A stretch of 63,690 bases of DNA, filler included, from Guillardia theta CCMP2712 (taxonomy: Eukaryota; Protista; Cryptophyta), in the NCBI RefSeq assembly GCF_000315625.1. It is 4 parts of 4 records of this genome, joined end to end, with 100 filler letters (N's around TTAATTAATTAA, not from the genome) between each part and the next. Parts side by side here need not be neighbours in the genome. Positions count along the whole stretch, not along the records: positions 25,485 to 56,180 come from NW_005434507.1; 3 more parts are not named here. One strand, written 5' to 3'. The notes under the pieces are model-generated. The model did not search any database and was not told the origin of the DNA. It saw nothing but the letters and a program-made list of their open reading frames with translations. Made by a program: the position numbers and the translations under genes. Shown here in pieces: positions 25,485 to 56,180 of this stretch. Position 1 is the first letter of the stretch, and each line of letters begins with the position of its first letter.

Positions 25485-26069
25485 CTTGACGACCTCTCCT
25501 TCCACCCCTCCTTCCTCCTCCCCATCGACCCCGTCGACATCCCAGACCCCTCCGCTACTACCTGTGATGACCGCTGCCTGTCGCCTTGCAGTGTGCTGCC
25601 CCTGCCCCTCCTCTTCCCTGACCCTCCCTGCCCCGTCGCCTCTGCCCTTGACCTCTCCTCGTCCGACGACCCCTCCCTCGACGCCCTGCCGGATCCCGGA
25701 CCTCCCGGCAGCTGGGGCCCGGAGACCAGCCGCTGGGACGCGGCGGCGCGGAGCAAGCACAGCTCGGCGTGCAGGGGCATGAGCCGGCTGACCGCGCAGG
25801 AGAAGCTCGACATCGTCTGCCTCTACTACTCCGCCCCGGCCGCGACCAAGCACCGACGGACAATCCAGCAGCAGGACCTGTCGAGGAAGTACTGCAAGAG
25901 CCGGGCGGCGATCTGCAAGGTGCTGAGGCCGGAGTACGCGAGGGGGGTCATGGCGACGGCTCAAGGGCTCATGGTCAAGAACCACAACGAGATCCTCGAC
26001 AACATCGCACAGGAAGAGCGTCGCAAGCACAAGGCCTTGCGCCGAGGGCCAAGCGAGGCGACTGGCTGA
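25485..26069 (+). CDS. CENP-B/psq-type HTH family copy 1 (5' end lost at the contig edge)
   Basis: GMSRLTAQEKLDIVCLYYSAPAATKHRRTIQQQDLSRKYCKSRAAICKVLRPEYA. Compare the CENP-B N-terminus RRQLTFREKSRII...KGEIARRFNIPPSTLSTILKNK. Confidence 0.75.
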   Translation, partial: LDDLSFHPSFLLPIDPVDIPDPSATTCDDRCLSPCSVLPLPLLFPDPPCPVASALDLSSSDDPSLDALPDPGPPGSWGPETSRWDAAARSKHSSACRGMSRLTAQEKLDIVCLYYSAPAATKHRRTIQQQDLSRKYCKSRAAICKVLRPEYARGVMATAQGLMVKNHNEILDNIAQEERRKHKALRRGPSEATG

Positions 26070-27610
26070 GAGGTGCGAGGAGGTATTGTGATGCTGCTCA
26101 GAATCCGGACGTAGCGGATTCTGCACTGGCTGGGCAGGCGCCCGACCTCCGAGACAGCAGCGTGTCGGACGGGCTAGACCTGATGCACCTTGCTGGCAAC
26201 TTCTTGTCATCATGCCGACAAGTGACTTGGAGGACGACTTGCCCGCCGATTGGTGGTGGGCCCGAGTGAAGAACTTGGAAGCACTGGCAAAATAGTATGC
26301 GTGAGGCGGCCGATTGACGCTAGCCTCCAAATGTCTAGATCCTAGTTCATTTGACATCAATCCGAGATTTACATACGTTTAGATCCAAAATATCACAAAC
26401 AAACATGGCTCCATGACTCTTTCATGGGCGAAGTGGGTGGATGAGGCTCTTGCTGGTGTTCAACTTGGAATCAGTCAAGATCCCTGAATAGTCTTCATCA
26501 AGAGATGTGAACGACATTGATTTACAATCATGACATGAAAGGTATTTGCGGCAGGCAGCATATGTAGATCTTACTGTTATTGGTAAGATGATGTTGAAGA
26601 GCCAGCACAACTATCCATGTCGACCCCCCTACATAACATCCGATCTCGAACCACACGCCGCATGTTGTTCAAAACCTGTGTTTTGACCTTCAGGCTCCCT
26701 TGAATGAGAAGTCTTGATGAGACCATGATGCCTATGCAACGGTTTCTGAGTATCATGTTGAGTACATTGAAAGAGTTTTGAAAGACTACTCTCCTGATTG
26801 TCCTTGTACTGATTTTTAACTTAATTTTGAGTGAAAAGTTGTATACATCGGCAGTCACTTTCGGTCACAGCGGGCCTGCTCTAGAGTCAGCCCGATTCCT
26901 TGGCACTGAGACTCCCGGGAGGCACCATCGGAGTCGATCCCCGGCCCGCCGCCCCGACCCGCCGGCCCCACGAAAGTGAAATAAATAATAATAAACCATG
27001 AAAGGATAATTTTACTACTCTCCAGCAAGTATGTGACCAGCGACTCAAACAAGCAAGCGATCACCGGTCCTGATAACAGTGATCAGGGCTCGAGGGGGGT
27101 GGGGTGTCGCGGACTGGGGAAGCCCGTGACTCTCCGGAGCAGTACCAGGGGTACACGTCGAGTCGAGTCGGACTGGTGACTCAAAAAAGAAAAGTTTAAT
27201 ACCGTCCACTACCCCTCCTGTTTTCCACTAGTGAACTATCACTGCCCACCGGTCCAGTCTCCCTCAGTGGGGGAATGTCGCTACCATGTTGTCTCTTCGG
27301 TCCGCGACTCTCCGCCTGACAAGATGGAATGAAGACACCCCTGAAGGGGGGGTAGTGCGCGAGGTAGGCTGGTGGCGGGGGTACACAGCGAGTCGGACTC
27401 GTAATGAAAGTAAGCAGACGCTTGTAAAAAGAAAGTAGTCACCGGTCCTCCTTTTAATAAATCATAAGTTTACTACCGTCCCCCACCCCCCCCTGGAGTG
27501 GGGGAATGTCGCTACCTCCTGCTGTCCCCTTGGCTTACAAGCTGCCAGCCCCTGCTCCCTCCCTCACCCGCTGAGCCCCTCCTCCTATCCCTCCCTCCTC
27601 AGCTCCTGCT

Positions 27611-28244
27611 ATGTCCCCGTCTCTACCCCACGGGAACCATCCCTAGAGTTCTGAGGACATACTGACATACTCCCACCACTCACTGAAAGCTGAACGACTT
27701 CACCATATTTATCCCATCTCAACTACTCTACAATACACAACGTTGATACCCTGCAGTCTGATATTTTCTGCTCCCCCCGCCATCGAGCATACCAGACTAG
27801 ATGGCTGATGCTTGAACTCCATGGTCCGACGACCNNNNNNNNNNNNNNNNNNNNNNNNNNNNNNNNNNNNNNNNNNNNNNNNNNNNNNNNNNNNNNNNNN
27901 NNNNNNNNNNNNNNNNNNNNNNNNNNNNNNNNNNNNNNNNNNNNNNNNNNNNNNNNNNNNNNNNNNNNNNNNNNNNNNNNNNNNNNNNNNNNNNNNNNNN
28001 NNNNNNNNNNNNNNNNNNNNNNNNNNNNNNNNNNNNNNNNNNNNNNNNNNNNNNNNNNNNNNNNNNNNNNNNNNNNNNNNNNNNNNNNNNNNNNNNNNNN
28101 NNNNNNNNNNNNNNNNNGACGGCTCGAGGGCTCATGGTCAAGAACCGCAACGAGATCCTTCACAACATCGCGGAGGAGCGTCTCAAGGAGGAGACCCAGC
28201 AGACCATCACAACACTCAAGGTCATGCGCCGAGGCACCCGCTGA
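27611..28244 (+). pseudogene. HTH family copy 2, disrupted
   Basis: The family start ATGTCCCCGTCTCTACCCC at 27611 breaks after ~19 nt into retroelement-derived sequence. The family 3' end (GLMVKNRNEILHNIAEERLKEE...) follows the gap at 28118-28244. Confidence 0.6.
27655..27822 (-). repeat. Diverged direct copy of 29698-29862 (retroelement 5' region fragment)
   Basis: CATACTGACATACTC(C/A)CACCACTCA(C/T)TGAAAGCTGAACGACTTCACCATATTTATC... is present at both sites. Confidence 0.75.
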
Positions 28245-28309
28245 GCCCCTCTTCCTCTCTCCCACCGCAGTCTCTACGCTTTCTCCTCCCTCCCTTCCTC
28301 CCTGAAGAC

Positions 28310-30912: not shown

Positions 30913-31269
30913 ATGTCCCCGTCTCTACCCCTCCTCCTCCCTCCCTTCCTCCCTGACGACCCCTCCTTCCACCCCTCCTTCCTCCTCCCCATCGACTCCG
31001 TCCCCACAACCTGTGATGACCGCTGCCTGTCGCCGTGCAGTGTGCTGCCCCTCCCCCTTCTTCTCCCTGACCCTCCCTGCCCCGTCGCCTCTGCCCTTGA
31101 CCTCTCCTCGTCCGACGACCCCTCCCTCGACGCCCTGCCCAGCCGCTGGGACGCGGCGGCGCGGAGCAAGCACAGCTCGGCGTGCAGGGGCAGGAGCCGG
31201 CTGACCGCGCAGGAGAAGCTCGACATCATCTACCTCTACTACTCCGCCCCAGCCACGACCAAGCACTGA
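30913..31269 (+). pseudogene. HTH family copy 3, truncated after helix 1
   Basis: Ends ...EKLDIIYLYYSAPATTKH*. The recognition helix is absent and there are internal deletions relative to copy 4. Confidence 0.75.
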
Positions 31270-32400: not shown

Positions 32401-33087
32401 ATGTCCCCGTCTCTGCCCCTCCTCCTCCCTCCCTTCGTCCCTGACGACCCCTCCTTCCACCCATCCTTCCACCTCCACGTCGACTTCTCCTTCCACCCCT
32501 CCTTCCTCCTCCCCATCGACCCCGTCGACATCCCAGACCCCTCCGCTACTACCTGTGATGACCGCTGCCTGTCGCCTTGCCGTGTGCTGCCCCTCCCCCT
32601 CCTTCTCCCTGACCCTCCCTGCCCCGTCGTCGCTGCCCTCGACCTCTCCTGGCCCGACGACCCCTCCCTCGACGTCCTGCCGGATCCCGGACCTCCCGGC
32701 AGCTGGGGCCCGGAGGCCAGCCGCTGGGACGCGGCGGCGCGGAGCAAGCACAGCTCGGCGTGCAGGGGCAGGAGCCGGCTGACCGCGCAGGAGAAGCTCG
32801 ACATCGTCTGCCTCTACTACTCCGCGCCGGCCACGACCAAGCACCGACGGACAATCCGGCAGCGGGACCTGTCGAGGATGTACGGCAAGAGCCGCCCAGC
32901 AATCAGCAAGGTGCTGAGGCCGGAGTACGCGAGGGGGGTCATGGCGACGGCTCGAGGGCTCATGGTCAAGAACCGCAACGAGGTCCTCCACAACATTGCG
33001 GAAGAGGAGCGTCTCAAGGGTGAGCTCGCACAGACCATCACAACACTCAAGGTCATGCGCCGAGGGCCAGGCAGAGCGACTGGCTGA
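32401..33087 (+). CDS. CENP-B/psq-type HTH family copy 4 (intact, 228 aa)
   Basis: Pro/Asp-rich N-terminus, RSRLTAQEKLDIVCLYY...RQRDLSRMYGKSRPAISKVLRPEYA, and a helical C-terminal tail. Confidence 0.8.
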   Translation: MSPSLPLLLPPFVPDDPSFHPSFHLHVDFSFHPSFLLPIDPVDIPDPSATTCDDRCLSPCRVLPLPLLLPDPPCPVVAALDLSWPDDPSLDVLPDPGPPGSWGPEASRWDAAARSKHSSACRGRSRLTAQEKLDIVCLYYSAPATTKHRRTIRQRDLSRMYGKSRPAISKVLRPEYARGVMATARGLMVKNRNEVLHNIAEEERLKGELAQTITTLKVMRRGPGRATG

Positions 33088-42217: not shown

Positions 42218-43000
42218 GGGTCATTGACAGATCTGCTTTAGCTTCCTCCAACACCAGCCCGATCGTCAGCGATGGCTTGAAGGAAACAAGCCTGGAGACT
42301 GGATCACCGTGATGAAACAGACAGCCTACCCGGAGCCATCAAACGCCTGTCAATCGGATGACTCGCAGCGTTGCCACCTGGCCTAGACAAGTAGCGAGAG
42401 GATGGCTTGAGGTAGGTCCGGGCTGGAGGTGCAAGGTATGGCTTGACAGTGCTTCAGCGGAGCTTCACCCACGCCTTCAACAACAAGCAATGGTTGTAAG
42501 ACGCTCATAGCAGTCGACTTGTGCGATCCATCCGGTTACTGCAAGAGCAGACCTGGTCAAGGCTTGGGGACCTTTTGACAACCTGATCCTCGCCGACTCT
42601 CGCACATGCCATACTCGCTCCATACCCCACTTGTCATCTCCTTTTCCCGTCCCAGTCTTCACACACCTCACCTTCTTCTGGTTCCACCAGACAAGTTGAT
42701 CTGCTTCTCACAAGTTCTCCTTGCACTGTCTCTACGTGTCGCGTCGTGATGTCTGGGATGCTCGTCCACCAAGTCCTGCGTCAGATGCACCCCTGACCCT
42801 GATCATGCAGCGGCATAGTCCCTGCGTCCCTGTCTCCCTCTTCTCCCTCCCTCCCCCCTCCACTCGCACCAGCAGCATACTGTAATGCCTCCTTTGCTAG
42901 TCGTGTGTCTTTAACTTTTATCCCACGAACCATCTTCTCTCCTCCCTGCCCTACGATTACCTCTCCCTCCCCTTTCGCCCCTCCTCTGCCCTCTCAGCCA

Positions 43001-43659
43001 CTACCGCCCTCCCTCCCCTGGCCCTCGCCGCATCATCTCCGTCCAGGTAGACTGCATGGGCTCCTCCTTCAGACGCTCCTCCTCCGCGATGCTCTCGAGG
43101 ACCTCGTTGCGGTTCCTGACCATGAGCCCTTGACCCGTCGTCATGACCCCCCTCGCGTACTCCGGCCTCAGCACCTTGCTGATCGCCGCACGGCTCTTGC
43201 CGTACCTTCGCGATAAGTCCTGCTGCTGCATAGACCGTTTCCCCGTTGGAGACACTGGTGCGGAGTAGTAGAGGCAGACGATGTCGAGCTTCTCCTGCGC
43301 GGTCAGCCGGCTCCTGCCCCTACACGCCGAGCTGTGCTTGCTCCGCGCCGCCGCGTCCCAGCGGCTGGTCTCCGGGTCACGGCAGCGTCTGCGGGAGCGG
43401 TGTCGTCGGGGAGAGGCAGGAGGACGTCGAGGGAAGGGTCTTCGGCCAGGGAGAGTTCAGGGACAGGTATTGTTCAGGGAGTGCCAGGGATCAGAAAGGA
43501 GTTGAAGATGTCTAAAGTAGACGAGGAGAAGCAGCGGTCTAGAGAGGTAAAAGAGGGGTCTGAGACATCGACGGGGTCGATGGGGAGGAGGAAGTTGGGG
43601 TTGAGGGAGGGGTCGTCGAGGAGGAAGGAGGAGAGCGTGAGGAGGAGAGGGGGAGACAT
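43001..43659 (-). pseudogene. HTH family copy 6 (B-type, 1-bp frameshift near 43385)
   Basis: 659 nt versus 660 nt in copies 8 and 10. It reads GGCAGCGTCT where the paralogs read GGCAGGCGTCT. Confidence 0.7.
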
Positions 43660-44292
43660 CAGGGAGGGCAGGAAGGACAGAGGCCTTCCGAGTCGAGGAA
43701 GAAAGGAACTTGTCGGAGCAATGCGTCAGATGGTGGGGAGGAGCAGGTCGTGGGAGAGGGTGGGGAGAGTGACCTTATGCGATATTCCCCGTGCTGACAG
43801 GAAGGTGCAGGGAGTGTCTTTAAAGATTTCTCGTACCGGTGATATTGAGGGGGAATAGCGGGGTGGTGAAGGGTGGAGGAGGGTCTACTCCACATGAAAG
43901 ACTGTGAGCGCCGAAGCGTCGCTTTACTACGACTGATGGGATCACGTCCTGTGACTTTTAAAGCCTGTGAGTTGTAAGAAGTAAACTCTTTGACTTCCAA
44001 TGACCCGTTTTCTTTGGGGCAAGGAGGGGTCTGATTCCGTGTCCAAGGAGAGGGTGGGGGTCACGCGGATCGGGGAACAAGAGGTCTTGGGTCCTAGTAA
44101 AGCCAAGAAGCAACAAGGACAATGTTGGCGTCTCAATACAAGAGGACCGGTGATGGAATCTTGCCTCCGATGGAGGGGTGGGGGGCTTCTTGAAGGACCC
44201 CTCCTCTCCGGAAACATCCCATTTCCATTTCCGCGCTGAATCATCCTCTTCCGATCCTCGTGTAGCCCAGCACCTCCCATCCGTCCCCTCAG

Positions 44293-44504
44293 GGAACGAT
44301 TGGCTGACATGTACTTTGCAAATCTCATCGCTTTTTTGCTCGGATGGATGAAACTTGGGTCTGGATAGCTGGTAAGTGACGAATATGAAAGCTGCAGTCA
44401 GGGGATGATTGTACTGACATGTTCTTTAAAAATTCCTGGTTTTTCCTTGCTTGCATGGATTAAACTCATCTTCATAGAAAGTAAGTACCATATCATATGA
44501 TGCT
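44293..44504. mobile_element. 212-bp AT-rich insertion flanked by a 5-bp CTCAG target-site duplication
   Basis: The empty site CCCCTCAGCGATG is present in the three sister copies. Here CTCAG occurs at 44288-44292 and 44505-44509. Confidence 0.65.
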
Positions 44505-44511
44505 CTCAGCG

Positions 44512-45090
44512 ATGTATCCTCCTCTATGTGATATCCCCCCTTCTATCCTTGTTGACGACGCCTCCCTCAACCCCTTCCTCCTCCTCCCCATCGACCCCGT
44601 CGACATCCACGACGACCCCTCAGGCTCCGCTAGCCCTGACGCCCTCCTTCCCTCCATCACTCTTTCAAGCCCCGACGACCCCTCCCTCGACGTCATCCCG
44701 CCTCTCCCCGACGACACTGCCCCCGCAGACGCCTGCCGGGGCCAGGAGACCAGCCGCTGGGACGCGGCGGCGCGGAGCAAGCACAGCTCGGCGTGCAGGG
44801 GCAGGAGCCGGCTGACCGTGCAGGAGAAGCTCGACATCGTCTGCCTCTACTACTTGGCGCCAGTGTCTCCAACGGGGAAACGGTCTATGCAGCAGCAGGA
44901 CTTATCGCGAAGGTACGGCAAGAGCCGTGCGGCGATCAGCAAGGTGCTGAGGCCGGAGTACGCGAGGGGGGTCATGACGGCGGGTCAAGGGCTCAAGGCG
45001 AGCAGGCGGGCGACGGTGCTGAGGAGCATCGCGGAGGAGGAGCGGGGGAGGCTGCTTGCGCTAGGGAGGAGTGGAGAAGGTGTTGCGTGA
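44512..45090 (+). CDS. HTH family copy 7 (A-type)
   Basis: Intact ORF with the HTH and the A-type tail KASRRATVLRSIAEEERGRLLALGRSGEGVA*. Confidence 0.8.
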   Translation: MYPPLCDIPPSILVDDASLNPFLLLPIDPVDIHDDPSGSASPDALLPSITLSSPDDPSLDVIPPLPDDTAPADACRGQETSRWDAAARSKHSSACRGRSRLTVQEKLDIVCLYYLAPVSPTGKRSMQQQDLSRRYGKSRAAISKVLRPEYARGVMTAGQGLKASRRATVLRSIAEEERGRLLALGRSGEGVA

Positions 45091-47670
45091 GGATGAAGGA
45101 AGGATGGGATAAAGAGGAGAGGGATTGTTTCTTGAAGAGGTCTTGAGAATAATGCTCGTTGGATCTGGGTGGTATGTTGCTTCCTTCCATGCAGACCCAT
45201 CACAGCACTCCTTCAATCGCACTGACGTAAGAGATCATCGCCTCCAGTCCTGATCAACTCCCTCTGGTGATGTTGTACACACAGCCGTCGAGACCATGTA
45301 GAAAGTCAATCAGGAGCTAGCGGCTCAATAGCACAGCGGCAAGCAGGTCAGGCTACTGTTGCTTGCTAGGACAGACGGTGGATCGAGCAAAGGGTCAGTC
45401 AGTTGCAGCTAGGAAAGTTGAGGAGCCATCGACCGGCGCTGTCTCTCGTCATCTGTCAAGTGAGGTGGCTCAAGAACTGAGGGCTAGGATCACAGGCTTG
45501 CCAGTCTGGGTAGTCGTGGGGAGTAGTGCCAGGGTTCGGAGCCGGCCGGGACCACTGGCGCAGCAGCAGCACCGGAAACCATCGAACTCGCCCGCGGCTG
45601 AAAGCTGCATGCTCGACCGTACCCTGAGTCAATCCAGCCGGCGGGAACTGAGGGAGGCAAGCGGACCAAATGGAACTCCGAAAGCGGTGGGTGCCGGGTA
45701 GACAGTGAGCTTTTGCCGCGCGACAGCCGGGCCCGAAGTCCCGAAGGCCCCCGGCCCGGCCACCGATTCCGGGGATGCCCGTCAGAATCGTCGCCGAACT
45801 TAATGATCACTGAGCCAATCCAGCCGACGCTATCACATGCAACTTCAATTCAAGCGGCAGACATGCACTGATGATAAAACCCCTCATGTCCGGGGCCCTA
45901 CGAAACTAGCCACAAGGACTCTCTTTACTCAAAGTTAAGTTTAAAATAAGTTTTTGTCTTTACTACTGTCCTTGAGATTTCGCTTAACTTTCAACGGTCT
46001 CCCCTTGCATGCAATCGATTGGTTGACATTTTTTGTTTCGTGGACAGTCGAGAGGACCGGTCCTTCCGAGTGAGTTGCGCTGGGTGGAGTGTGGGTAGGG
46101 GGTGTCGCGGACCGGGGAACAAACTGGCAAGGGAACGGGACTCCGGGAAGGGGTTGGGTAGCATTGGTAGGAGGGGTGGGTGGGTAGAGGATGCGACCCA
46201 TGCATGCAACCCATGCCCCAGTATAAAAACATGTCAAGAAACCTTCTCCTCCCTCCCTCCCTCCCTCCCTCCCTACCTGAAGGACTGTCTGCATGCCTTC
46301 CTCGTGCTGACCCCCTTCATCTGACTCCTCGTCTACCTCCTCGTCCTCGTCTCGTCTTGCCCATGTCGGTTCATTATCACTGATGACTATGGCTGACGGC
46401 ACAAGGACTCCAAGTCTAGTGCTGCAAGGCCCCCACGGGGTCCTGGACAGCGTGGTGGAGTACTCGACAGCCTCGAGCAGGAGCCCATCAAGCTCGCGCG
46501 TCTCAAGTACATCCGGCGGCGGACTCAGCCAACTGCAAGGATCAGACACGAAGGCTCGCGGTCGGACTGTTAGAAGCAGCACAGTGATGTCGAATGGCAT
46601 GTTTGGAGTGAAGCTAAGCTTCTATGAACCAGCTCATACATCGAGTGCATTCAAAGAAATCAACCGATGCGTCAATGAAGCAATCGAGGGCACAAAGCCC
46701 CAACGGATCGCTCCATCGCAAGCTGTCAGCTTCCAAGCCGTCATCGGATCCGATGCCTCCTCTGTGCAAACCGATTGCATCAAGCAGCGCAGCCGTCTTG
46801 ACTCATCCTTGACACAGGCAACAACATGAGGGTCATTGACAGATCTGCTTTAGCTTCCTCCAACACCAGCCCGATCGTCAGCGATGGCTTGAAGGAAACA
46901 AGCCTGGAGACTGGATCACCGTGATGAAACAGACAGCCTACCCGGAGCCATCAAACGCCTGTCAATCGGATGACTCGCAGCGTTGCCACCTGGCCTAGAC
47001 AAGTAGCGAGAGGATGGCTTGAGGTAGGTCCGGGCTGGAGGTGCAAGGTATGGCTTGACAGTGCTTCAGTGGAGCTTCACCCACGCCTTCAACAACAAGC
47101 AATGTTGGTAGTAAGACGCTCATAGCAGTCGACTTGTGCGATCCATCCGGTTACTGCAAGAGCAGACCTGGTCGAGGCCTGGGGACCTTTTGACAACCTG
47201 ATCCTCGCTCAATTTCGCACATGCCATACTCGCTCCATACGTCGTGGGCGTGCTCGACTTGTTGAAGCTGCAGAAGTAGTAGTTGTAGGTGCCCAGCATC
47301 ACGCTGTAGACGATGAAGGCCAGCAGAACCACAAAAGACGAGTCGATCTGCTTCTCACAAGCTCTCCTTGTACTGTCTCTACGTGTCGAGTCGTGATCGT
47401 GATGCCTGGCATGCTCGTCCACCAGACCTTCCGTCAGATGCCCCCCTTGCCACTCATCATGCAGCGGCCTTGTCCCTCACACCCACCCTCCCTCCGTCCC
47501 TTTCTCCCTCGGTCCCTGCCTGCCTGCCATTTTGAAACAGCAGCATGCATGCCTTGTTCGCCTGTCATACGCTTTTATTTTTGTCCCCTTCCTCCCCGTC
47601 CCACAATTACCTTGCCCTCCTCCCTCCCCTCGATTTCCGCCCTCTCTCCTCTCCTCTGCGCTCTCAGCCA

Positions 47671-48330
47671 CTACCGCCCTCCCTCCCCTGGCCCTCGCCG
47701 CATCATCTCCGTCCAGGTAGACTGCATGGGCTCCTCCTTCAGACGCTCCTCCTCCGCGATGCTCTCGAGGACCTCGTTGCGGTTCCTGACCATCAGCCCT
47801 TGACCCGCCGTCATGACCCCCCTCGCGTACTCCGGCCTCAGCACCTTGCTGATCGCCGCACGGCTCTTCCCGTACATCCTCGACAGGTCTCGCTGCCGCA
47901 TAGACCGTTTCCCCGTTGGAGACACTGGCGCCGAGTAGTAGAGGCAGACGATGTCGGCCTTGTCCTGCGCGGTCAGCCGGCTCCTGCCCCTGCACGCCGA
48001 GCTGTGCTTGCTCCGCGCCGCCGCGTCCCAGCGGCTGGTCTCCGGGCCCCGGCAGGCGTCTGCGGGAGCGGTGTCGTCGGGGAGAGGCAGGAGGACGTCG
48101 AGGGAGGGGTCGTCGGTCAGGGAGAGGTCAGGGACAGGTATTGTGCAGGGAGTGCCAGGGATCAGAAAGGAGTTGAAGATGTCTAAAGTAGACGAGGAGA
48201 AGCAGCGGTCTAGAGAGGTAAAAGAGGGGTCTGAGACATCGACGGGGTCGATGGGGAGGAGGAAGGAGGGGTTGAAGGATGGGTCGTCTAGGAGGAGGGA
48301 GGAGATCGCGAGGATGTAAGGGGGAGACAT
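47671..48330 (-). CDS. HTH family copy 8 (B-type, 219 aa)
   Basis: RSRLTAQDKADIVCLYY...RQRDLSRMYGKSRAAISKVLRPEYA with the B-type tail MVRNRNEVLESIAEEERLKEEPMQSTW. Confidence 0.8.
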   Translation of the reverse strand: MSPPYILAISSLLLDDPSFNPSFLLPIDPVDVSDPSFTSLDRCFSSSTLDIFNSFLIPGTPCTIPVPDLSLTDDPSLDVLLPLPDDTAPADACRGPETSRWDAAARSKHSSACRGRSRLTAQDKADIVCLYYSAPVSPTGKRSMRQRDLSRMYGKSRAAISKVLRPEYARGVMTAGQGLMVRNRNEVLESIAEEERLKEEPMQSTWTEMMRRGPGEGGR

Positions 48331-48973
48331 CAGGGAGGGCAGGAAGGACAGAGGCCTTCCGAGTCGAGGAAGAAAGGAACTTGTCGGAGCAATGCGTCAG
48401 ATGATGGGGAGGAGCAGGTCGTGGGAGAGGGTGGGGAGAGTAACCTTGTATGCGATATTCCCCGTGCTGACAGGAAGGCATGCAGGGAGTGTCTTGAAAG
48501 ATTTCTCGTACCGGTGATATTGAGGGGGAATAGAGGGGTGGTAAAGGGTGGAGGAGGGTCTACTCCACATGAAAGACTGTGAGCGCCGAAGCGTCGCTTT
48601 ACTACGACTGATGGGATCACGTCCTGTGACTTTTAAAGCCTGGTGAATTGTAACAAGTAAACTTTTTTTTGACTTCCAATGACCCGTTTTCTTTGGGGCA
48701 AGGAGGGGTCTGATTCCGTGTCCAAGGAGAGGGTGGGGGTCACGCGGATCGGGGAACAAGAGGTCTTGGGTCCTAGTAAAGCCAAAAAGCAACAAGGACA
48801 ATGTTGGCGTCTCAATACAAGAGGACCGGTGATGGAATCTTGCCGTTGATGGAGGGGTGGGGGGCTTCTTGAAGGACCCCTCCTCCCCAGAAACATCCCA
48901 TTTCCATTTCCGCGCTGAATCATCCTCTTCCGATCCTCGTGTAGCCCAGCACCTCCCATCCGTCCCCTCAGCG

Positions 48974-49552
48974 ATGTATCCTCCTCTGTTTGATATCCCC
49001 CCTTCCTTCCTGCTTGACGACGCCTCCCTCAACCCCTTCCTCCTCCTCCCCATCGACCCCGTCGACATCCAAGATGACCCCTCAGGCTCCGCTACCCCTG
49101 ACGCCCTCCTTCCCTCCATCACTCTTTCAAGCCCCGACGACCCCTCCCTCGACGTCCTCCCGCCTCTCCCCGACGACACTGCCCCCGCAGACGCCTGCCG
49201 GGGCCTGGAGACCAGCCGCTGGGACGCGGCGGCGCGGAGCAAGCACAGCTCGGCGTGCAGGGGCAGGAGCCGGCTGACCGCGCAGGAGAAGCTCGACATC
49301 GTCTGCCTCTACTACTCGGCGCCAGTGTCTCCAACGGGGAAACGGTCTATGCAGCAGCAGGACTTATCGCGAAGGTACGGCAAGAGCCGTGCGGCGATCA
49401 GCAAGGTGCTGAGGCCGGAGTACGCGAGGGGGGTCATGACGGCGGGTCAAGGGCTCAAGGCGAGCAGGCGGGCGATGGTGCTGAGGAACATCGCGGAGGA
49501 GGAGCGGGGGAGGCTGCTTGCGCTAGGGAGGAGTGGAGAAGGTGTTGCGTGA
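48974..49552 (+). CDS. HTH family copy 9 (A-type)
   Basis: Intact ORF, divergent from copy 8 across ~640 bp. Confidence 0.8.
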   Translation: MYPPLFDIPPSFLLDDASLNPFLLLPIDPVDIQDDPSGSATPDALLPSITLSSPDDPSLDVLPPLPDDTAPADACRGLETSRWDAAARSKHSSACRGRSRLTAQEKLDIVCLYYSAPVSPTGKRSMQQQDLSRRYGKSRAAISKVLRPEYARGVMTAGQGLKASRRAMVLRNIAEEERGRLLALGRSGEGVA

Positions 49553-52071
49553 GGATGAAGGAAGGATGGGATAAAGAGGAGAGGGATTGTTTCTTGAAGA
49601 GGTCTTGAGAATAATGCTCGTTTGATCTGGGTGGTATGATGCTCCCTTCCATGCAGAGCCATCACTGCATTCCTTCAATCGCACTGACGTAAGAGATCAT
49701 CGCCTCCAGTCCTGATCAACTCCCTCTGGTGATGTTGTACACATAGCCGTCGAGACCATGTAGAAAGTCAATCAGGAGCTAGCCTCAATAGCAAGCAACT
49801 AGCACGTCAGGCTACTGTTGCTTGCTAGGACAGACGGTGGATCGAGCAAAGGGTCAGTCAGTTGCAGCTAGGAACCGAAAGTTGAGGAGCCATCGACCGG
49901 CGCTGTCTCTCGTCATCTGTCAAGTGAGGTGGCTCGAGAAAGGGCTAGGCTCACAGGCTTGTCTGGGTAGTCGTGGGGAGTACCGCGGAAGTTCGGAGCC
50001 GGCGGCGGGACCGTATCGGACCGTGCCGGCAGCAGCAGCACCGGAACGGGGGCCCATCGGGCTCGCCCGCGGCTGAAGGCTGCATGCTCTATGGATCTCA
50101 CTCGTGCTAGGGCAGTCACTGAGTATCGGAACCGTACTCTGAGTCAATCCAGTCGGGGAGGGAGGCAAGCGGACGGCAAATGGAAAGCGGTGGGTGCCGG
50201 GTGGACTGAGCTTTTGCGACAGCCGGGCCCGGTCACCGGGTGTCCAAAGGCCCGAAGGCCCCCGGGCCCGCCGGTCCCGGGGGCATGCCCGTCAGAATCC
50301 GAGGGCCGCCGACTCTCACTTAACGATCACTGAGCCAATCCAGCCGACGCTATGCAATTCAAGCGGACATGCATAAAACCCCTGATGTCCGGGGCCCTCC
50401 GAAGGTATACTAGCCACAAGTACTCTCTTTACTCAAAGTTAAGTTTAAAATAAGTTTTTGTCTTTACTACTGTCCTTGAGATTTCGCTTAACTTTGTCGC
50501 CCCCTGCATGCAATCGATTGGTTGACATTTTTTGTTTCGTGGACAGTCGACTCCGAGGACCGGTCCTTCCGAGTGAGTTGCGCTGGGTGGAGTGTGGGTA
50601 GGGGGTGTCGCGGACCGGGGAACAAACTGGCAAGGGAACGGAAGGGGGTTGGGTAGGATCGGTAGGAGGGGTGGGTGGGTTCGCTCCATCCCTACCTGAC
50701 CGACTGTCTGCATGCCTCCCTCGTGCTGACCCCCTTCATCTGACTCCTCGTCTACCTCCTCGTCCTCGTCTCGTCTTGCCCATGTCGGTTCATTATCACT
50801 GATGACTATGGCTGACGGCACAAGGACTCCAAGTCTAGTGCTGCAAGGCCCCCACGGGGTCCTGGACAGCGTGGTGGAGGACTCGACAGCCTCGAGCAGG
50901 AGCCCATCAAGCTCGCGCGTCTCAAGTACATCCGGCGGCGGACTCAGCCAACTGCAAGGATCAGACACGAAGGCTCGCGATCGGACTGTTAGAAGCAGCA
51001 CAGTGATGTCGAATGGCATGTTTGGAGTGAAGCTAAGCTTCTATGAACCAGCTCATACATCGAGTGCATTCAAAGAAATCAACCGATGCGTCAATGAAGC
51101 AATCGAGGGCACAAAGCCCCAACGGATCGCTCCATCGCAAGCTGTCAGCTTCCAAGCCGTCATCGGATCCGATGCCTCCTCTGTGCAAACCGATTGCATC
51201 AAGCAGCGCAGCCGTCTTGACTCATCCTTGACACAGGCAACAACATGAGGGTCATTGACTCCAACACCAGCCCGATCGTCAGCGATGGCTTGAAGGAAAC
51301 AAGCCTGGAGACTGGATCACCGTGATGAAACAGACAGCCTACCCGGAGCCATCAAACGCCTGTCAATCGGATGACTCGCAGCGTTGCCACCTGGCCTAGA
51401 CAAGTAGCGAGAGGATGGCTTGAGGTAGGTCCGGGCTGGAGGTGCAAGGTATGGCTTGACAATGCTTCAGTGGAGCTTCACCCACGCCTTCAACAACAAG
51501 CAATGGTGGTGGTAAGACGCTCATAGCAGTCGACTTGTGCGATCCATCCGGTTACTGCAAGAGCAGACCTGGTCGAGGCCTGGAGACCTTTTGACAACCT
51601 GATCCTCGCTCAATTTCGCACATGCCATACTCGCTCCATACGTCGTGGGCGTGCTCGACTTGTTGAAGCTGCAGAAGTAGTAGTTGTAGGTGCCCAGCAT
51701 CACGCTGTAGACGATGAAGGCCAGCAGAACCACAAAAGACGAGTCGATCTGCTTCTCACAAGCTCTCCTTGTACTGTCTCTACGTGTCGAGTCGTGATCG
51801 TGATGCCTGGCATGCTCGTCCACCAGGTCTTCCGTCAGATGCCCCCCTTGCCACTCATCATGCAGCGGCCTTGTCCCTCACACCCACCCTCCCTCCGTCC
51901 CTTTCTCCCTCGGTCCCTGCCTGCCTGCCATTTTGAAACAGCAGCATGCATGCCTTGTTCGCCTGTCATACGCTTTTATTTTTGTCCCCTTCCTCCCCGT
52001 CCCACAATTACCTTGCCCTCCTCCCTCCCCTCGATTTCCGCCCTCTCTCCTCTCCTCTGCGCTCTCAGCCA

Positions 52072-52731
52072 CTACCGCCCTCCCTCCCCTGGCCCTCGCC
52101 GCATCATTTCCATCCAGGTAGACTGCATGGGCTCCTCCTTCAGACGCTCCTCCTCCGCGATGCTCTCGAGGACCTCGTTGCGGTTCCTGACCATCAGCCC
52201 TTGACCCGCCGTCATGACCCCCCTCGCGTACTCCGGCCTCAGCACCTTGCTGATCGCCGCACGGCTCTTGCCGTACATCCTCGACAGGTCTCGCTGCCGC
52301 ATAGACCGTTTCCCCGTTGGAGACACTGGCGCCGAGTAGTAGAGGCAGACGATGTCGGCCTTGTCCTGCGCGGTCAGCCGGCTCCTGCCCCTGCACGCCG
52401 AGCTGTGCTTGCTCCGCGCCGCCGCGTCCCAGCGGCTGGTCTGCGGGCCCCGGCAGGCGTCTGCGGGAGCGGTGTCGTCGGGGAGAGGCAGGAGGACGTC
52501 GAGGGAGGGGTCGTCGGTCAGGGAGAGGTCAGGGAGAGGTATTGTGCAGGGAGTGCCAGGGATCAGAAAGGAGTTGAAGATGTCTAAAGTAGACGAGGAG
52601 AAGCAGCGGTCTAGAGAGGTAAAAGAGGGGTCTGAGACATCGACGGGGTCGATGGGGAGGAGGAAGGAGGGGTTGAGGGAGGGGTCGTCGAGGAGGAGGG
52701 AGGAGAGCGTGAGGAGGAGAGGGGGAGACAT
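52072..52731 (-). CDS. HTH family copy 10 (B-type, 219 aa)
   Basis: Intact ORF, near-identical to copy 8. Confidence 0.8.
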   Translation of the reverse strand: MSPPLLLTLSSLLLDDPSLNPSFLLPIDPVDVSDPSFTSLDRCFSSSTLDIFNSFLIPGTPCTIPLPDLSLTDDPSLDVLLPLPDDTAPADACRGPQTSRWDAAARSKHSSACRGRSRLTAQDKADIVCLYYSAPVSPTGKRSMRQRDLSRMYGKSRAAISKVLRPEYARGVMTAGQGLMVRNRNEVLESIAEEERLKEEPMQSTWMEMMRRGPGEGGR

Positions 52732-53381
52732 CAGGGAGGGCAGGAAGGACAGAGGCCTTCCGAGTCGAGGAAGAAAGGAACTTGTCGGAGCAATGCGTCA
52801 GATGATGGGGAGGAGCAGGTCGTGGGAGAGGGTGGGGAGAGTGACCTTCAACCGTATGCGATATTCCCCGTGCTGACAGGAAGGCATGCAGGAGTGTCTT
52901 GAAAGATTTCTCGTACCGGTGATATTGAGGGGGAATAGCGGGGTGGTAAAGGGTGGAGGAGGGTCTACTCCACATGAAAGACTGTGAGCGCCGAAGCGTC
53001 GCTTTACTACGACTGATGGGATCACGTCCTGTGACTTTTAAAGCCTGTGAGTTGTAAGAAGTAAACTCTTTGACTTCCAATGACCCGTTTTCTTTGGGGC
53101 AAGGAGGGGTCTGATTCCCATTCCAAGGAGAGGGTGGGGGTCACGCGGATCGGGGAACAAGAGGTCTTGGGTCCTAGTAAAGCCAAGAAGCAACAAGGAC
53201 AATGTTGGCGTCTCAATACAAGAGGACCGGTGATGGAATCTTGCCGTTGATGGAGGGGTGGGGGGCTTCTTGAAGGACCCCTCCTCCCCAGAAACATCCC
53301 ATCTCCGCGCGCCTCAGTCACCAGCATTTCTCCTCTTCCGATCCTCGTGTAGCCCAGCACCTCCCATCCGTCCCCTCAGCG

Positions 53382-53714
53382 ATGTATCCTCCTCTGTTTG
53401 ATATCCCCCCTTCTATCCTTGTTGACGACGCCTCCCTCAACCCCTTCCTCCTCCTCCCCATCGACCCCGTTGACATCCACGACCCCTCAGGCTCCGCTAG
53501 CCCTGACGCCCTTCTTCCCTCCATCACTCTTTCAAGCCCCGACGACCCCTCCCTCGACGTCCTCCCGCCTCTCCCCGACGACACCGCTCCCGCAGACGCC
53601 TGCCGGGGCCCGGAGACCAGCCGCTGGGACGCGGCGGCGCGGAGCAAGCACAGCTCGGCGTGCAGGGGCAGGAGCCGGCTGACCGCGAGGAAGGATGGGA
53701 TAAGGAGGAGATGA
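53382..53714 (+). pseudogene. HTH family copy 11 (A-type, HTH deleted)
   Basis: ...GRSRLTA is fused directly to the A-type 3' flank AGGAAGGATGGGATAA. The result is a 110-aa product with no HTH. Confidence 0.75.
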
Positions 53715-54557
53715 TCAACTATGAGTTTTCATTTTTGTTGGTTTTATCTGCTTTCGTTTTCGGATGATCAGCGCATTTAGCACTGTGGGATCGGCATACT
53801 TGATGGAAATTTCATGTTCTGCATTAATGTTCACATTCAGCGCTTTTTAGATTTCACAACAGTGATTTCGATATATTATTGTTTGATGGTGCATCGCCAA
53901 TGAATCGTTAGCAGGTCTGAGACGCAGGAGGAGGAATCAAGATTTTGGGGATTGAAAAGACGACTGGGAGAGGAGACGTTTACAAGCCTAAGGGAGAAAT
54001 GACTTGTAGAAACTGGTAAAGTAAACTAGTACTTTTCATGTCCTACGGAAACACCCGAGTGTTCGTTGCTTTTAATCGCATCTTGTCAGAAAGATTCAGC
54101 TGGGGCCACTTTTAAACCCCTGCATTGTAAGATGTAAATGTACAAATGACTGGATTGTTAAGAATCTAGTAAACCAATGCTGCTACGCTGTCCGGCGGCC
54201 GAATAAAATCTGTGCCGATCGAATGCTCTTGAGTGGGTAGCCCCATTCTTGTTTACTACCTGGTAGCGATAAGCCACGGTATTGCGACGCTACAGTACAT
54301 TGTCAGAAAGATGTGTTAAGGCAACGGGTCGGACAAGGCCGACATAGTTGAAAAGATTTCATTTCAACTCCTTTGATGAATGCGCTGTAAAGTTAAAAAA
54401 AAAAGGATGCCGGGGAGTCTGTCGGGGGAATGTCGCCTGCTATATAATCAGCTACCTCCCTTCCCACCCCCACCCCCCTTCTTCCACATCTGCTAGCCGC
54501 TCCCTCGTGCTTGCCTGCCTACGAATCTCTTCCCCCCCTTCTCTCCAACCACCTTCA

Positions 54558-55211
54558 ATGTCCCTCCCTCTATCCCTCTATCCTTCTTATCTACTAGGCA
54601 GCGAAGACCCCTCCTTCAACCCCTCTTTCCTTCTCCCCATAGACACCGCCGATGTCTCAACCTCCGACCGCCTCAACAACCATTTCTTCATCTCTTCCTC
54701 TTGCCACGATGTCTTAATCCTCCTTCCTCCTCCCTGCACAATACCTGTCCCTGACCTCTCCCTGGCCGACGACCCCTCCCTCGACGTCCTCCCGCCTCTC
54801 CCCGACGACACCGCTCCCGCAGACGCCTGCCGGGGCCCGGAGACCAGCCGCTGGGACGCGGCGGCGCGGAGCAAGCACAGCTCGGCGTGCAGGGGCAGGA
54901 GCCGGCTGACCGCGCAGGAGAAGCTCGACATCGTCTGCCTCTACTACTCGGCGCCAGTGTCTCCAACGGGGAAACGGTCTATGCGGCAGCGAGACCTGTC
55001 GAGGATGTACGGCAAGAGCCGTGCGGCGATCAGCAAGGTGCTGAGGCCGGAGTACGCGAAGGGGGTCATGACGACGGCTCAAGGGCTCATGGTCAGGAAC
55101 CGCAACGAGGTCCTCGAGAGCATCGCGGAGGAGGAGCGTCTGAAGGAGGAGCCCATGCAGTCTACCTGGATGGAAATGATGCGGCGAGGGCCAGTGGGAA
55201 AGAGGGGGTAG
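54558..55211 (+). CDS. HTH family copy 12 (B-like, inverted, divergent N-terminus)
   Basis: MSLPLSLYPSYLLGSEDPSFNPSFLLPID..., followed by the HTH and a B-type tail. Confidence 0.8.
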   Translation: MSLPLSLYPSYLLGSEDPSFNPSFLLPIDTADVSTSDRLNNHFFISSSCHDVLILLPPPCTIPVPDLSLADDPSLDVLPPLPDDTAPADACRGPETSRWDAAARSKHSSACRGRSRLTAQEKLDIVCLYYSAPVSPTGKRSMRQRDLSRMYGKSRAAISKVLRPEYAKGVMTTAQGLMVRNRNEVLESIAEEERLKEEPMQSTWMEMMRRGPVGKRG

Positions 55212-56127: not shown

Positions 56128-56180
56128 ATGATGTTGGACCTGATGCATAGACGCACGGATATCTCGAAAACGTGATCGTC

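What the first reader, a model, noticed from the sequence alone, without database searches (positions are those of the whole stretch)
25485..55211. Locally amplified family of stand-alone CENP-B/pogo-type HTH genes (12 copies plus a remnant in 30 kb)
Seen: intronless ~190-230-aa ORFs share an acidic Pro/Asp/Leu N-terminus, an invariant linker SRWDAAARSKHSSACRG, the domain RSRLTAQEKLDIV...QxDLSRxYGKSRAAISKVLRPE and a short helical tail. Known: that domain pattern is the N-terminal psq-type HTH of CENP-B and pogo/Tigger transposases, which has been domesticated repeatedly (CENP-B, S. pombe Abp1/Cbh, Pipsqueak). No second HTH, DDE domain or terminal inverted repeat is visible. Inference: this is a lineage-specific family of transposase-derived transcription or chromatin regulators in active birth-and-death expansion. 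It may act in transposon surveillance, as Abp1 does for LTR elements, and it is my best candidate for an undescribed system here.
Basis: partly seen in the sequence, partly recalled or inferred. Interest (0 to 1): 0.85.

Follow-up and report, generated by a model that had tools for sequence, protein, structure and literature searches.

The report
Tandem array of CENP-B-like HTH genes
A Guillardia theta scaffold carries about 30 tandemly amplified, gene-converting copies of a short gene with one CENP-B/pogo-type DNA-binding helix-turn-helix and no transposase domain; the family is real and new to the literature, but almost silent in the RNA data sampled and of unknown function.

Summary
The piece is Guillardia theta CCMP2712 scaffold JH993131.1, window coordinate + 29064. 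It holds 12 loci of one family:
- 6 intact ORFs of 192-228 aa
- 2 intact ORFs cut by the piece edge or a gap
- 1 pseudogene
- 3 fragments

The CENP-B/pogo-type HTH call is supported only by transitive homology. Pfam finds nothing in the window copies. The core profile matches G. theta's own two-HTH protein GUITHDRAFT_165955 (hhalign E 7e-14). The wider family profile matches the human CENP-B DNA-binding domain (1hlv_A, E 7.5e-9). CENP-B is also the top, though weak, structural neighbour (Z 5.9).

No DDE domain, second HTH or terminal inverted repeat was found, either here or in 91 family representatives.

The HTH frame is under moderate purifying selection (pN/pS 0.36). The N-terminus is relaxed. 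The "invariant linker" is also invariant as DNA, and a clear gene-conversion tract covers the core. RNA evidence is almost nil.

Verdict: this is a lineage-specific, concertedly evolving array of DNA-binding-domain-only, pogo-like proteins. A regulatory or transposon-surveillance role is untested. It is a new variant of a known kind, of moderate interest.

The parts
25485..26069 (+). Family copy cut by the left edge of the piece. The ORF is intact from the edge to its stop.
28119..28244 (+). C-terminal tail fragment (TARGLMVKNRNEILHNIAEERLKEE...*). It begins at the first base after gap 1, so the rest of the copy is either unread or absent.
30913..31269 (+). Truncated copy of 118 aa: N-terminal region, linker and first HTH helix, ending in the middle of the core.
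32401..33087 (+). Intact copy of 228 aa (identical to P0006). It contains a 36-bp duplication in the N-terminal region.
39913..40451 (+). Copy intact up to gap 2. Its 96.6%-identical paralogue at 44512 ends about 35-40 nt further on. This is GUITHDRAFT_120071.
43001..43662 (-). Pseudogene. It has a stop and a frameshift in the N-terminal half, with the core and tail intact. The core carries a gene-conversion tract from the '+'-type paralogues (CDS nt ~369-455).
44497..45090 (+). Intact copy of 197 aa (192 aa if counted from the MYPPL start at 44512).
47671..48330 (-). Intact copy of 219 aa. This is the first exon of gene model GUITHDRAFT_120074, which is probably over-extended to 306 aa.
48974..49552 (+). 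Intact copy of 192 aa (identical to P0007).
52072..52731 (-). Intact copy of 219 aa, used as the reference here. AlphaFold2 predicts residues 1-99 as disordered and residues 100-200 at pLDDT 88-97.
53382..53714 (+). Truncated copy of 110 aa that ends just after RSRLTA, at the junction of the higher-order unit. Positions 53539-53691 are 99.4% identical to 54766-54919.
54558..55211 (+). Intact copy of 217 aa (identical to P0002). Its nearest relative outside the assembly is metagenome contig L001, 84% identical over 1134 bp.
39604..53691 (.). Three tandem higher-order units of about 4.4 kb (39604-44295, 43988-48974, 48672-53691; 87-97% identity). Each holds one '+' and one '-' copy in convergent orientation around a 2.6-kb spacer. 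About 640 bp separate the divergent starts of neighbouring units.
54602..56130 (.). Inverted partial copy of the higher-order unit, 83-87% identical to 42079-43618.

Best explanation
**What it is.** This is a young, Guillardia-lineage-specific tandem array of intronless genes. Each gene encodes a short protein made only of a DNA-binding domain of the CENP-B/pogo type.

**Protein layout.**
- Residues 1 to about 99 form an acidic, Pro/Leu/Asp/Ser-rich disordered N-terminus. It carries two conserved short motifs, DDPSxNPxFLLPIDPVD and DDPSLDVLPPLPDD.
- The rest is a basic module. It starts with a family-specific helix carrying invariant W-x7-H-x3-C.
- Next comes a three-helix HTH homologous to the first HTH of CENP-B (CENP-B_N). 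Its recognition helix is GKSRAAISKVL.
- Then follow the inter-domain linker helices. The protein stops just before the point where the second HTH (HTH_Tnp_Tc5) begins in its long paralogues.

**Origin.** The long paralogues are DDE-less two-HTH proteins, some with a C-terminal PB1 domain. They occur in Guillardia (GUITHDRAFT_165955), Hanusia and other marine protists. The short form predates the Guillardia/Hanusia split.

**How the array evolved.** The window's subfamily was amplified by segmental tandem duplication. The units are ~4.4 kb here and ~2.5/5 kb upstream. Ectopic gene conversion centred on the ~370-bp core keeps the copies homogeneous.

**Shown here:**
- the anatomy of the array
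- the homology to the CENP-B-type domain
- the absence of DDE domains and terminal inverted repeats
- moderate purifying selection on the HTH frame
- gene conversion
- decay of about a quarter of the loci
- near-absence of RNA in the runs sampled

**Inferred:**
- The proteins bind DNA sequence-specifically through the conserved recognition helix and the basic arm (CRGRSR).
- The acidic tail recruits partners, either as an activator or as a competitor of the long two-HTH paralogues.
- The array is silenced or expressed only under particular conditions.
For: **Array and census.** See: 12 loci in the piece, about 30 on scaffold JH993131 and at least 5 on JH993281.

**Homology.**
- The core profile A1 recovers 91 cluster representatives (24 at E<=1e-10) in 1.84 billion proteins.
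- Among these representatives, HTH_Tnp_Tc5 hits 24, CENP-B_N hits 17 and PB1 hits 8; none has a DDE domain.
- CENP-B_N lies exactly over the region homologous to the core.
- A1 against G. theta GUITHDRAFT_165955, which UniRef labels 'HTH CENPB-type domain': hhalign probability 98.1%, E 7.4e-14, 40% identity over 95 columns.
- The family profile A2 against PDB sequences: CENP-B 1hlv_A at E 7.5e-9 across both HTHs.

**Structure.**
- AlphaFold2 gives pLDDT 88-97 for residues 100-200.
- CENP-B(1-129) is the top of 48,161 chains in both models: Z 5.5 and Z 5.9, the latter with rmsd 2.1 A over 55 residues (chain 6-60). These are the same residues the HMM aligned.
- The next neighbours are Tc3, IstA and Brinker.

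**Coding constraint.** Core pN/pS is 0.36 in the HTH frame (Fisher p 2e-8). The other five frames give 0.54-1.6.

**Gene conversion.** Copy 43001-43662 carries 12 contiguous '+'-type diagnostic sites inside more than 160 '-'-type sites. Core dS is several-fold below flank dS.

**Lineage.** The window copies form one shallow clade (support 95/96) within the short forms. Hanusia short forms come from a transcriptome.

**No transposon features.**
Against: - Pfam CENP-B_N and HTH_psq do not hit any window copy, even at E<=10.
- Structural Z scores of 5-6 lie in the range the tool itself calls common for small helical domains.
- Foldseek finds nothing at E<=1e-3.
- RNA is close to absent. Only 4 reads of 60 nt among about 13 M reads fell on 6 kb holding three copies. 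Three runs guessed to be RNA and kept as assembled contigs, one of them labelled with the same organism as the genome reads, showed nothing.
- No array member has a transcriptome-derived twin.
- A core pN/pS of 0.36 is weaker constraint than the 0.05-0.2 reported for domesticated vertebrate pogo genes (PMC7386202).
- N-terminal dN/dS is about 0.4-1.3.
- The window copies have lost the CxxC...CxxC motif that divergent short members keep.
- Gene conversion can keep cores looking intact even in dead copies, as in 43001-43662.
- DNA binding itself has not been tested.
Confidence: 0.6

Rival explanations
1. The array is a mostly dead or neutral macrosatellite-like repeat. On this view the array copies make no functional product. 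Their ORFs survive because the duplications are young and because gene conversion from a few functional paralogues elsewhere keeps re-copying a selected core into them. Only the dispersed short paralogues (for example GUITHDRAFT_119890, 114295, 107687/9 and 121301) and the long paralogue GUITHDRAFT_165955 would be functional.
For: - RNA is almost absent over three copies, and no copy has a transcriptome twin.
- 4 of 12 loci in the piece are broken or truncated.
- A pseudogene carries a perfect, converted core.
- The linker is identical as DNA in 10 of 11 copies.
- The N-terminus evolves at dN/dS of about 1 between close copies.
- The zinc-ribbon-like motif has been lost.
Against: - Copies that differ by 20-25% in DNA still keep full-length ORFs. 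All 6 copies in the upstream array and 8 of 12 here are open.
- pN/pS of 0.36 holds in pairs within the array clade, and is 0.18 against the metagenome relative L001.
- Two short N-terminal motifs are conserved across subfamilies.
- The RNA test covered few conditions and only three copies.
Confidence: 0.27
2. The ORF belongs to a mobile element. The copies would be internal or non-autonomous derivatives of a pogo-like element, for example the 'Mover' family. PMC7386202 reports that family from red algae and Chromista, with a DNA-binding domain that hmmscan cannot detect. The autonomous DDE-bearing copy would lie elsewhere in the genome.
For: - The domain class (CENP-B_N) is typical of pogoR/Tigger transposases (PMC7386202).
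- The genes are intronless and multicopy, in a genome whose genes are usually rich in introns (my own knowledge).
- Paralogues occur on at least 7 scaffolds.
- DDE-less internal-deletion derivatives of pogo are common (PMC4231638).
Against: - No DDE, RT or integrase domain appears in 47 spacer ORFs of the piece.
- None of the 91 family representatives found without any length limit has one either.
- There are no terminal inverted repeats. The only inverted repeats are the oppositely oriented gene bodies.
- Between subfamilies, homology is confined to the ORF and does not extend to element-like termini.
- The copies are arranged as tandem higher-order units, not dispersed insertions.
- The HTH frame is under purifying selection.
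Confidence: 0.08
3. The family would act in transposon surveillance, as S. pombe Abp1/Cbh do at LTR elements: the proteins bind transposon sequences and recruit silencing factors.
For: Support comes only by analogy with another DDE-less pogo-derived DNA-binding protein family. The amplification and the fast-evolving N-terminus would fit an arms race.
Against: - No target element has been identified.
- No transposon-like sequence was detected in the piece.
- Expression is close to nil.
- Abp1/Cbh proteins keep both HTH domains and the DDE-derived domain (PMC4231638). These proteins keep only the first HTH.
Confidence: 0.05

Closest known systems
Human CENP-B DNA-binding domain (PDB 1HLV, 1BW6; Pfam CENP-B_N + HTH_Tnp_Tc5)
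   Same: - It has the same three-helix HTH class.
- The family profile hits 1hlv_A at E 7.5e-9.
- It is the top structural neighbour in both models, aligned to chain residues 6-60.
- Both have a basic arm before helix 1 and an R-L-T-x-x-E-K start to helix 1.
   Different: - The window proteins lack the second HTH, the DDE-derived domain and the dimerisation domain.
- They fall below the Pfam CENP-B_N threshold.
- They add an invariant W-x7-H-x3-C helix upstream and an acidic disordered N-terminus.
- They are multicopy and tandem rather than a single stationary gene.
Guillardia theta GUITHDRAFT_165955 and Hanusia phi P0050, with related protist proteins (CENP-B_N + HTH_Tnp_Tc5, some with PB1)
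   Same: - These are true paralogues: hhalign E 7e-14 with 40% identity over 95 columns.
- The alignment includes the W...H...C helix, the first HTH and the linker.
- They also lack a DDE domain.
   Different: - The long forms keep the second HTH (HTH_Tnp_Tc5 above threshold) and often a C-terminal PB1 domain.
- They form a separate clade (support 100/99).
- They are not known to be tandemly amplified.
Drosophila CAG (CG12346), a 225-aa DDE-less domesticated pogo DNA-binding protein (PMC4231638)
   Same: It is a short protein of about 200 aa derived from a pogo-type DNA-binding domain, with no DDE domain.
   Different: - CAG keeps both HTH domains.
- It is a single-copy gene conserved across Drosophila species.
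- The Guillardia proteins keep only the first HTH and form arrays of about 30 copies.
S. pombe Abp1/Cbh1/Cbh2
   Same: They are host proteins with pogo-like DNA-binding domains.
   Different: - Per PMC4231638 Fig. 1, they retain two HTH domains plus DDE_1.
- Their role at LTRs and centromeres has been shown experimentally.
- None of these points has been shown here.
Single-HTH relatives: Brinker (BrkDBD) and Pipsqueak (HTH_psq)
   Same: They are stand-alone proteins that use one HTH of the same clan. Brinker (2glo) appears among the structural neighbours at Z 4.5.
   Different: - There is no Pfam hit to BrkDBD or HTH_psq.
- Pipsqueak carries four tandem psq repeats (my own knowledge).
- The lineage is unrelated.
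D4Z4/DUX4-type macrosatellite: an intronless HTH transcription-factor ORF in every unit of a silenced tandem array (functional analogy from my own knowledge)
   Same: - The tandem units are a few kb long.
- Each unit carries an intronless HTH-protein ORF.
- The array is nearly silent in ordinary cells.
- The copies evolve in concert.
   Different: - The DNA-binding fold is unrelated (homeodomain pair).
- No evidence here for stage-specific activation or for heterochromatin.

Membership tests
Pfam CENP-B_N (PF04218) / HTH CENPB-type domain | Match to the Pfam CENP-B_N model at or above the gathering score (21.2 bits) | tested here: not met
   No CENP-B_N hit in any window copy or in 11 core sequences, even at E<=10. 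Long relatives reach 21.5-22.0 bits (P0039, P0049).
Pfam CENP-B_N (PF04218) / HTH CENPB-type domain | Statistically significant homology to genuine CENP-B-type DNA-binding domains | tested here: met
   The link is transitive. A1 to GUITHDRAFT_165955: E 7.4e-14, probability 98.1%. A1 to the long protist members: E 1e-11 to 1e-8. Family profile A2 to CENP-B 1hlv_A: E 7.5e-9.
Pfam CENP-B_N (PF04218) / HTH CENPB-type domain | Three-helix HTH fold that superimposes on CENP-B repeat 1 | tested here: met
   1hlv_A is the top of 48,161 chains in two models: Z 5.5 (3.1 A over 61 residues) and Z 5.9 (2.1 A over 55 residues). The Z scores are low in absolute terms, and Foldseek is not significant.
CENP-B-type bipartite DNA-binding domain (CENP-B, CAG, Tigger-derived genes) | A second HTH (HTH_Tnp_Tc5) after the first | tested here: not met
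   No HTH_Tnp_Tc5 hit. In the alignment to GUITHDRAFT_165955 the proteins end at residue 225, just before its Tc5 domain at 229-268.
pogo/Tigger DNA transposon | DDE_1 catalytic domain | tested here: not met
   Absent from the copies, from 47 spacer ORFs of the piece and from all 91 family representatives.
pogo/Tigger DNA transposon | Terminal inverted repeats bounding the unit | tested here: not met
   The only inverted repeats are the oppositely oriented gene bodies: 373 nt at 90% and 58 nt at 86%.
pogo/Tigger DNA transposon | TA target-site duplications and dispersed insertions | not tested
   No element termini could be defined. The copies form tandem higher-order units. Whole-genome dispersion could not be surveyed with these tools.
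Domesticated pogo-derived host gene (CENP-B, TIGD, JRK, CAG) | Stationary orthologues under strong purifying selection (Ka/Ks about 0.05-0.2 in PMC7386202) | tested here: inconclusive
   Core pN/pS is 0.36 (p 2e-8), and 0.18 against the metagenome relative L001. The N-terminus gives 0.4-1.3. The copies are multicopy and undergo gene conversion.
Domesticated pogo-derived host gene (CENP-B, TIGD, JRK, CAG) | Expression as a host gene | tested here: not met
   4 reads in about 13 M over three copies, and nothing in three runs kept as contigs. Short relatives do occur in the Hanusia phi transcriptome. Few conditions were sampled.
HTH_psq (PF05225, Pipsqueak) | Match to the Pfam HTH_psq model | tested here: not met
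   No hit at E<=10. The only trace is a low-scoring (0.80) language-model neighbour cluster in which 19% of members carry HTH_psq.

The most novel reading that the evidence does not exclude
The array is a silenced, macrosatellite-embedded battery of DNA-binding-domain-only proteins. It would be switched on only in a particular life-cycle stage or under stress. The proteins would then act in one of two ways. They could be acidic-tailed activators, analogous to DUX4. Or they could be dominant-negative competitors that occupy the DNA sites of the long CENP-B-type/PB1 paralogues or of a pogo-like transposase, as truncated transposase repressors do. The invariant W-x7-H-x3-C helix would be a new metal- or DNA-contacting extension of the CENP-B_N fold.
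Probability: 0.15. Interest if true: 0.7.

Novelty: new variant of a known kind. Interest (0 to 1): 0.42.

Why it matters
- **Domestication range.** Host proteins derived from pogo-type DNA-binding domains (CENP-B, Abp1/Cbh, CAG, TIGD/JRK) are a classic case of transposase domestication, described mainly in animals and fungi. This finding places a DDE-less CENP-B-type family in cryptophytes and other marine protists.
- **Extreme derivative.** Guillardia carries a form reduced to a single HTH, amplified to about 30 tandem copies and homogenised by gene conversion. Pfam cannot see it.
- **Annotation.** More than 20 "hypothetical protein GUITHDRAFT_1200xx" models now have a concrete fold and a family assignment.
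- **Study system.** The array is a tractable case of concerted evolution of a DNA-binding-protein gene array in an alga.
- **New motif.** The conserved W-x7-H-x3-C extension of the fold has no described counterpart.
- **Limits.** Function and expression remain unproven. A quarter of the loci are decaying, so the biological weight of the array itself may be small.

Tried and rejected
- **Direct Pfam and NCBIfam scans of the copies.** These gave only faint generic HTH_3, HTH_ParB and HTH_35 hits, and nothing for CENP-B_N or psq.
- **Guillardia-only core profile against PDB sequences.** Nothing.
- **Foldseek against PDB for both models.** Nothing at E<=1e-3.
- **ESM Atlas searches.** The shape search gave only generic resolvase and IS30 HTH neighbours at TM 0.33-0.40. 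The feature search gave a top score of 0.83, a CENP-B_N cluster. That is below the level the tool treats as more than a lead.
- **Literature.** No paper mentions these gene identifiers, the project PRJEB17505 or a CENP-B_N + Tc5 + PB1 architecture.
- **RNA.** Only one stretch (44300-50299) could be laid. It was nearly empty at 98% likeness. This is weak negative evidence, not proof of silence. The only raw-read RNA run, X5, carries a different coded organism name from the genome-read runs. It was listed as sharing their species label, so it may come from another strain.
- **Fungal origin.** A Zn2Cys6 hit suggested this at first. The Guillardia identity of the scaffold rules it out.
- **Antisense ORFs as the real genes.** Rejected, because their pN/pS is about 0.9-1.5.

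Full report
**1. What the sequence is**

The best protein hits of a window copy are all [quoted passage not shown] on a 112,452-bp contig. An exact match of window 50954-56180 to fetched locus L006 places the piece on scaffold JH993131.1 at window coordinate + 29064.

**2. The observation**

The ORF list and a tblastn census with the 219-aa copy give 12 family loci in 25485-56180.
- Six are intact ORFs of 192-228 aa: 32401-33087+, 44497-45090+, 47671-48330-, 48974-49552+, 52072-52731- and 54558-55211+.
- Two are intact as far as they can be read: 25485-26069+ (cut by the piece edge) and 39913-40451+ (runs into gap 2).
- One is a pseudogene, 43001-43662-, with a stop and a frameshift in the N-terminal half.
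- Three are fragments: 30913-31269+, 53382-53714+ and the tail 28119-28244+.

- The peptide RWDAAARSKHSSACRG occurs in all 11 copies that reach it.
- The N-terminus has pI about 4 and is rich in Pro, Leu, Asp and Ser. The remainder has pI 10-11.

*Gaps.* Gaps 2 and 3 are collinear with the paralogous unit: 426 against 423 nt, and 441 against 394 nt. At gap 1 the family sequence starts at the first base on the right, and there is none in the 235 nt on the left. That copy is therefore either partly unread, with the gap underestimated, or truncated. ORFs that read through N runs are artefacts.

**3.

Self-alignment shows three tandem higher-order units of about 4.4 kb, 87-97% identical. Each holds a '+' and a '-' copy in convergent orientation. 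An inverted partial unit lies at 54602-56130.

The array continues outside the piece.
- Six same-strand copies sit at 2.5-kb spacing at record 37.5-50.1 kb.
- About eight loci lie at 4-17 kb.
- Four more lie at 87.5-95.5 kb.
- This makes about 30 loci in the roughly 92 kb fetched.
- At least five copies of a divergent branch lie on scaffold JH993281 (L003).

Every annotated gene model inside the higher-order units is a family member. Forty-seven spacer ORFs of at least 90 aa have no transposase, RT or integrase domain; the only Pfam hit is a Zn2Cys6 domain at 35678-36217(-). The only inverted repeats within a unit are the oppositely oriented gene bodies.

**4. What the protein is**

*Direct scans fail.* Pfam and NCBIfam scans give only faint generic HTH hits over QxDLSRxYGKSRAAISKVL.

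*A profile of the conserved core finds a wider family.*
- Profile A1 was searched exhaustively against 1.84 billion cluster representatives. It finds 91 proteins at E<=1e-3 and 24 at E<=1e-10.
- The closer hits are further short Guillardia paralogues on other scaffolds (GUITHDRAFT_119890, 114295, 154379, 107687/9, 121301). They also include short proteins from the Hanusia phi transcriptome.
- The more distant hits are 270-580-aa proteins from Hanusia, an MMETSP transcriptome and marine metagenomes.
- In these, Pfam places CENP-B_N exactly on the homologous stretch, followed by HTH_Tnp_Tc5 above its gathering score. Eight also have a C-terminal PB1 domain.
- None of the 91 has a DDE domain.

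*Direct links to CENP-B-type domains.*
- Guillardia has one such long paralogue, GUITHDRAFT_165955, which UniRef labels 'HTH CENPB-type domain'.
- A1 aligns to it with hhalign probability 98.1%, E 7.4e-14 and 40% identity over 95 columns. The alignment ends just before its second HTH.
- The whole-family profile hits the sequence of the human CENP-B(1-129) crystal structure at E 7.5e-9 across both HTH domains.

*Structure.*
- AlphaFold2 with the deeper alignment predicts residues 1-99 as disordered and residues 100-200 at pLDDT 88-97.
- The ordered part has helix 103-113 (carrying W101, H109 and C113, invariant in 62 sequences). It then has a three-helix HTH (121-133, 146-153, 157-163) and three further helices.
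- CENP-B(1-129) is the best of 48,161 chains for both models. The better match has Z 5.9 and rmsd 2.1 A over 55 residues, at chain residues 6-60.
- Tc3, IstA and Brinker follow.
- These Z values are low in absolute terms and Foldseek is not significant. Structure therefore agrees with the assignment but does not carry it; the sequence profiles do.

*Tree.* A maximum-likelihood tree puts all long forms in one clade (support 100/99). The window copies form one shallow clade (95/96) within the short forms.

**5. Is the ORF a constrained gene?**

- Over seven semi-independent pairs, core pN/pS is 0.36 in the HTH frame (Fisher p 2e-8). The other five frames give 0.54-1.6, so the long antisense ORFs are by-products of high GC content.
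- The N-terminal region runs at 0.4-1.3.
- Core dS (0.09-0.3) is several-fold below flank dS.
- The 48 nt that encode the "invariant linker" are identical in 10 of 11 window copies. The only variants among 19 copies are four synonymous third-position changes.
- Pseudogene 43001-43662 is '-'-type at more than 160 diagnostic sites. It carries 12 contiguous '+'-type sites at CDS nt ~369-455, a clear gene-conversion tract over the HTH.
- The family therefore evolves in concert, and part of its striking invariance is homogenisation at the DNA level.

**6. Expression**

Only one stretch could be laid: 44300-50299, which holds three copies.
- A raw RNA-seq run gave 4 reads of 60 nt among about 13 million reads.
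- Three runs guessed to be RNA and kept as contigs gave nothing beyond a 28-nt low-complexity word. One of them is labelled with the same organism as the genome reads.
- No array member has a transcriptome-derived twin.
- This is negative evidence from few conditions.
- Short relatives are present in the Hanusia transcriptome.
- A metagenome contig 84% identical to the 54.5-kb copy keeps an intact ORF, with core dN/dS of 0.18.

**7. Interpretation**

*Best reading (confidence 0.6).*
- This is a Guillardia-lineage array of DNA-binding-domain-only proteins of the CENP-B/pogo type.
- It was made by tandem segmental duplication and is kept homogeneous by gene conversion.
- It is under moderate protein-level constraint, and is silenced or expressed only under particular conditions.
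- DNA binding through the conserved recognition helix and basic arm is inferred. So is partner recruitment or competition through the acidic tail.

*Rivals.*
- A largely dead macrosatellite-like array whose cores are refreshed by conversion (0.27).
- Fragments of a mobile element (0.08), disfavoured by the absence of a DDE domain, terminal inverted repeats or element termini.

**8. Comparison with known families and novelty**

According to PMC7386202, pogoR/Tigger transposases and their vertebrate domesticates carry CENP-B_N + HTH_Tnp_Tc5 + DDE_1. According to PMC4231638, Drosophila CAG is a 225-aa DDE-less two-HTH domesticate.

The Guillardia proteins differ in several ways.
- They keep only the first HTH.
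- They add the W-x7-H-x3-C helix.
- They fall below the Pfam threshold.
- They are tandemly amplified.

No paper in the searchable library mentions the genes or the architecture.

I rate this a new variant of a known kind with interest 0.42. The family assignment is solid and the array biology is attractive, but function and expression are unproven and part of the array is decaying.

Noticed in passing
window 35678-36217 (-): A 179-aa ORF carries a Zn(2)-Cys(6) binuclear cluster domain, nominally 'fungal' (PF00172, 27.7 bits against a cut-off of 21). It sits inside a cryptophyte array region between family copies.
   Followed up: partly
window 38331-38764 and 38834-39008: A 28-bp minisatellite (consensus CAAGATGATAGGGAGGTGTTACTACTAG) is present in 15.5 and 6.4 copies, just upstream of the first higher-order unit. 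It is a conceivable target for a repeat-binding HTH protein, but this is untested.
   Followed up: no
P0030, P0036, P0037, P0039, P0041, P0046, P0049, P0050, P0059, P0079: [quoted passage not shown] Eight of 91 representatives also have a C-terminal PB1 domain, and none has a DDE domain. No paper with this architecture was found.
   Followed up: partly
L002:114-734, L003 (3464-4081, 6671-7306, 10677-11360), L004:4761-5459, P0013, P0017, P0024, P0025: Divergent short members keep a CxxC-x(8-15)-CxxC motif resembling a zinc ribbon in the N-terminal region. P0017 gives a weak Pfam DZR hit (E 0.008). The motif is degenerate in all window copies.
   Followed up: partly
window 46850-48330 (-) and 51091-52731 (-): Gene models GUITHDRAFT_120074 (306 aa) and GUITHDRAFT_120076 (343 aa) extend the 219-aa ORFs by splicing past the stop codon into the spacer. 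The added residues look arbitrary, so the models are probably over-extended.
   Followed up: partly
window 41371-42217, 45941-46829, 50429-51248: The 2.6-kb spacer of each higher-order unit holds a conserved pair of overlapping opposite-strand ORFs (196-219 aa on the minus strand and 148 aa on the plus strand). They are 97-98% identical between units, have no Pfam hit and no annotated gene model.
   Followed up: partly
L001 (1537 bp) and L002 (750 bp), ENA metagenome project PRJEB17505: Environmental contigs carry intact relatives. L001 is 84% identical to window 54251-55364, flanks included. L002 is 88-96% identical to the JH993281 branch. They come either from a close Guillardia relative or from unassembled paralogues. 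The project could not be identified in the literature.
   Followed up: partly
window 44430-44458: A 28-nt Pro/Ser-codon-rich word is held at very high depth (up to 1100) by 31-nt contigs of run X6. It is probably a low-complexity word shared with many loci.
   Followed up: no
window 32451-32520 and 52645-52714: 36-bp tandem duplications (1.9 copies) lie inside the N-terminal coding region of two copies. They show that the disordered N-terminus changes length through small in-frame repeats.
   Followed up: no
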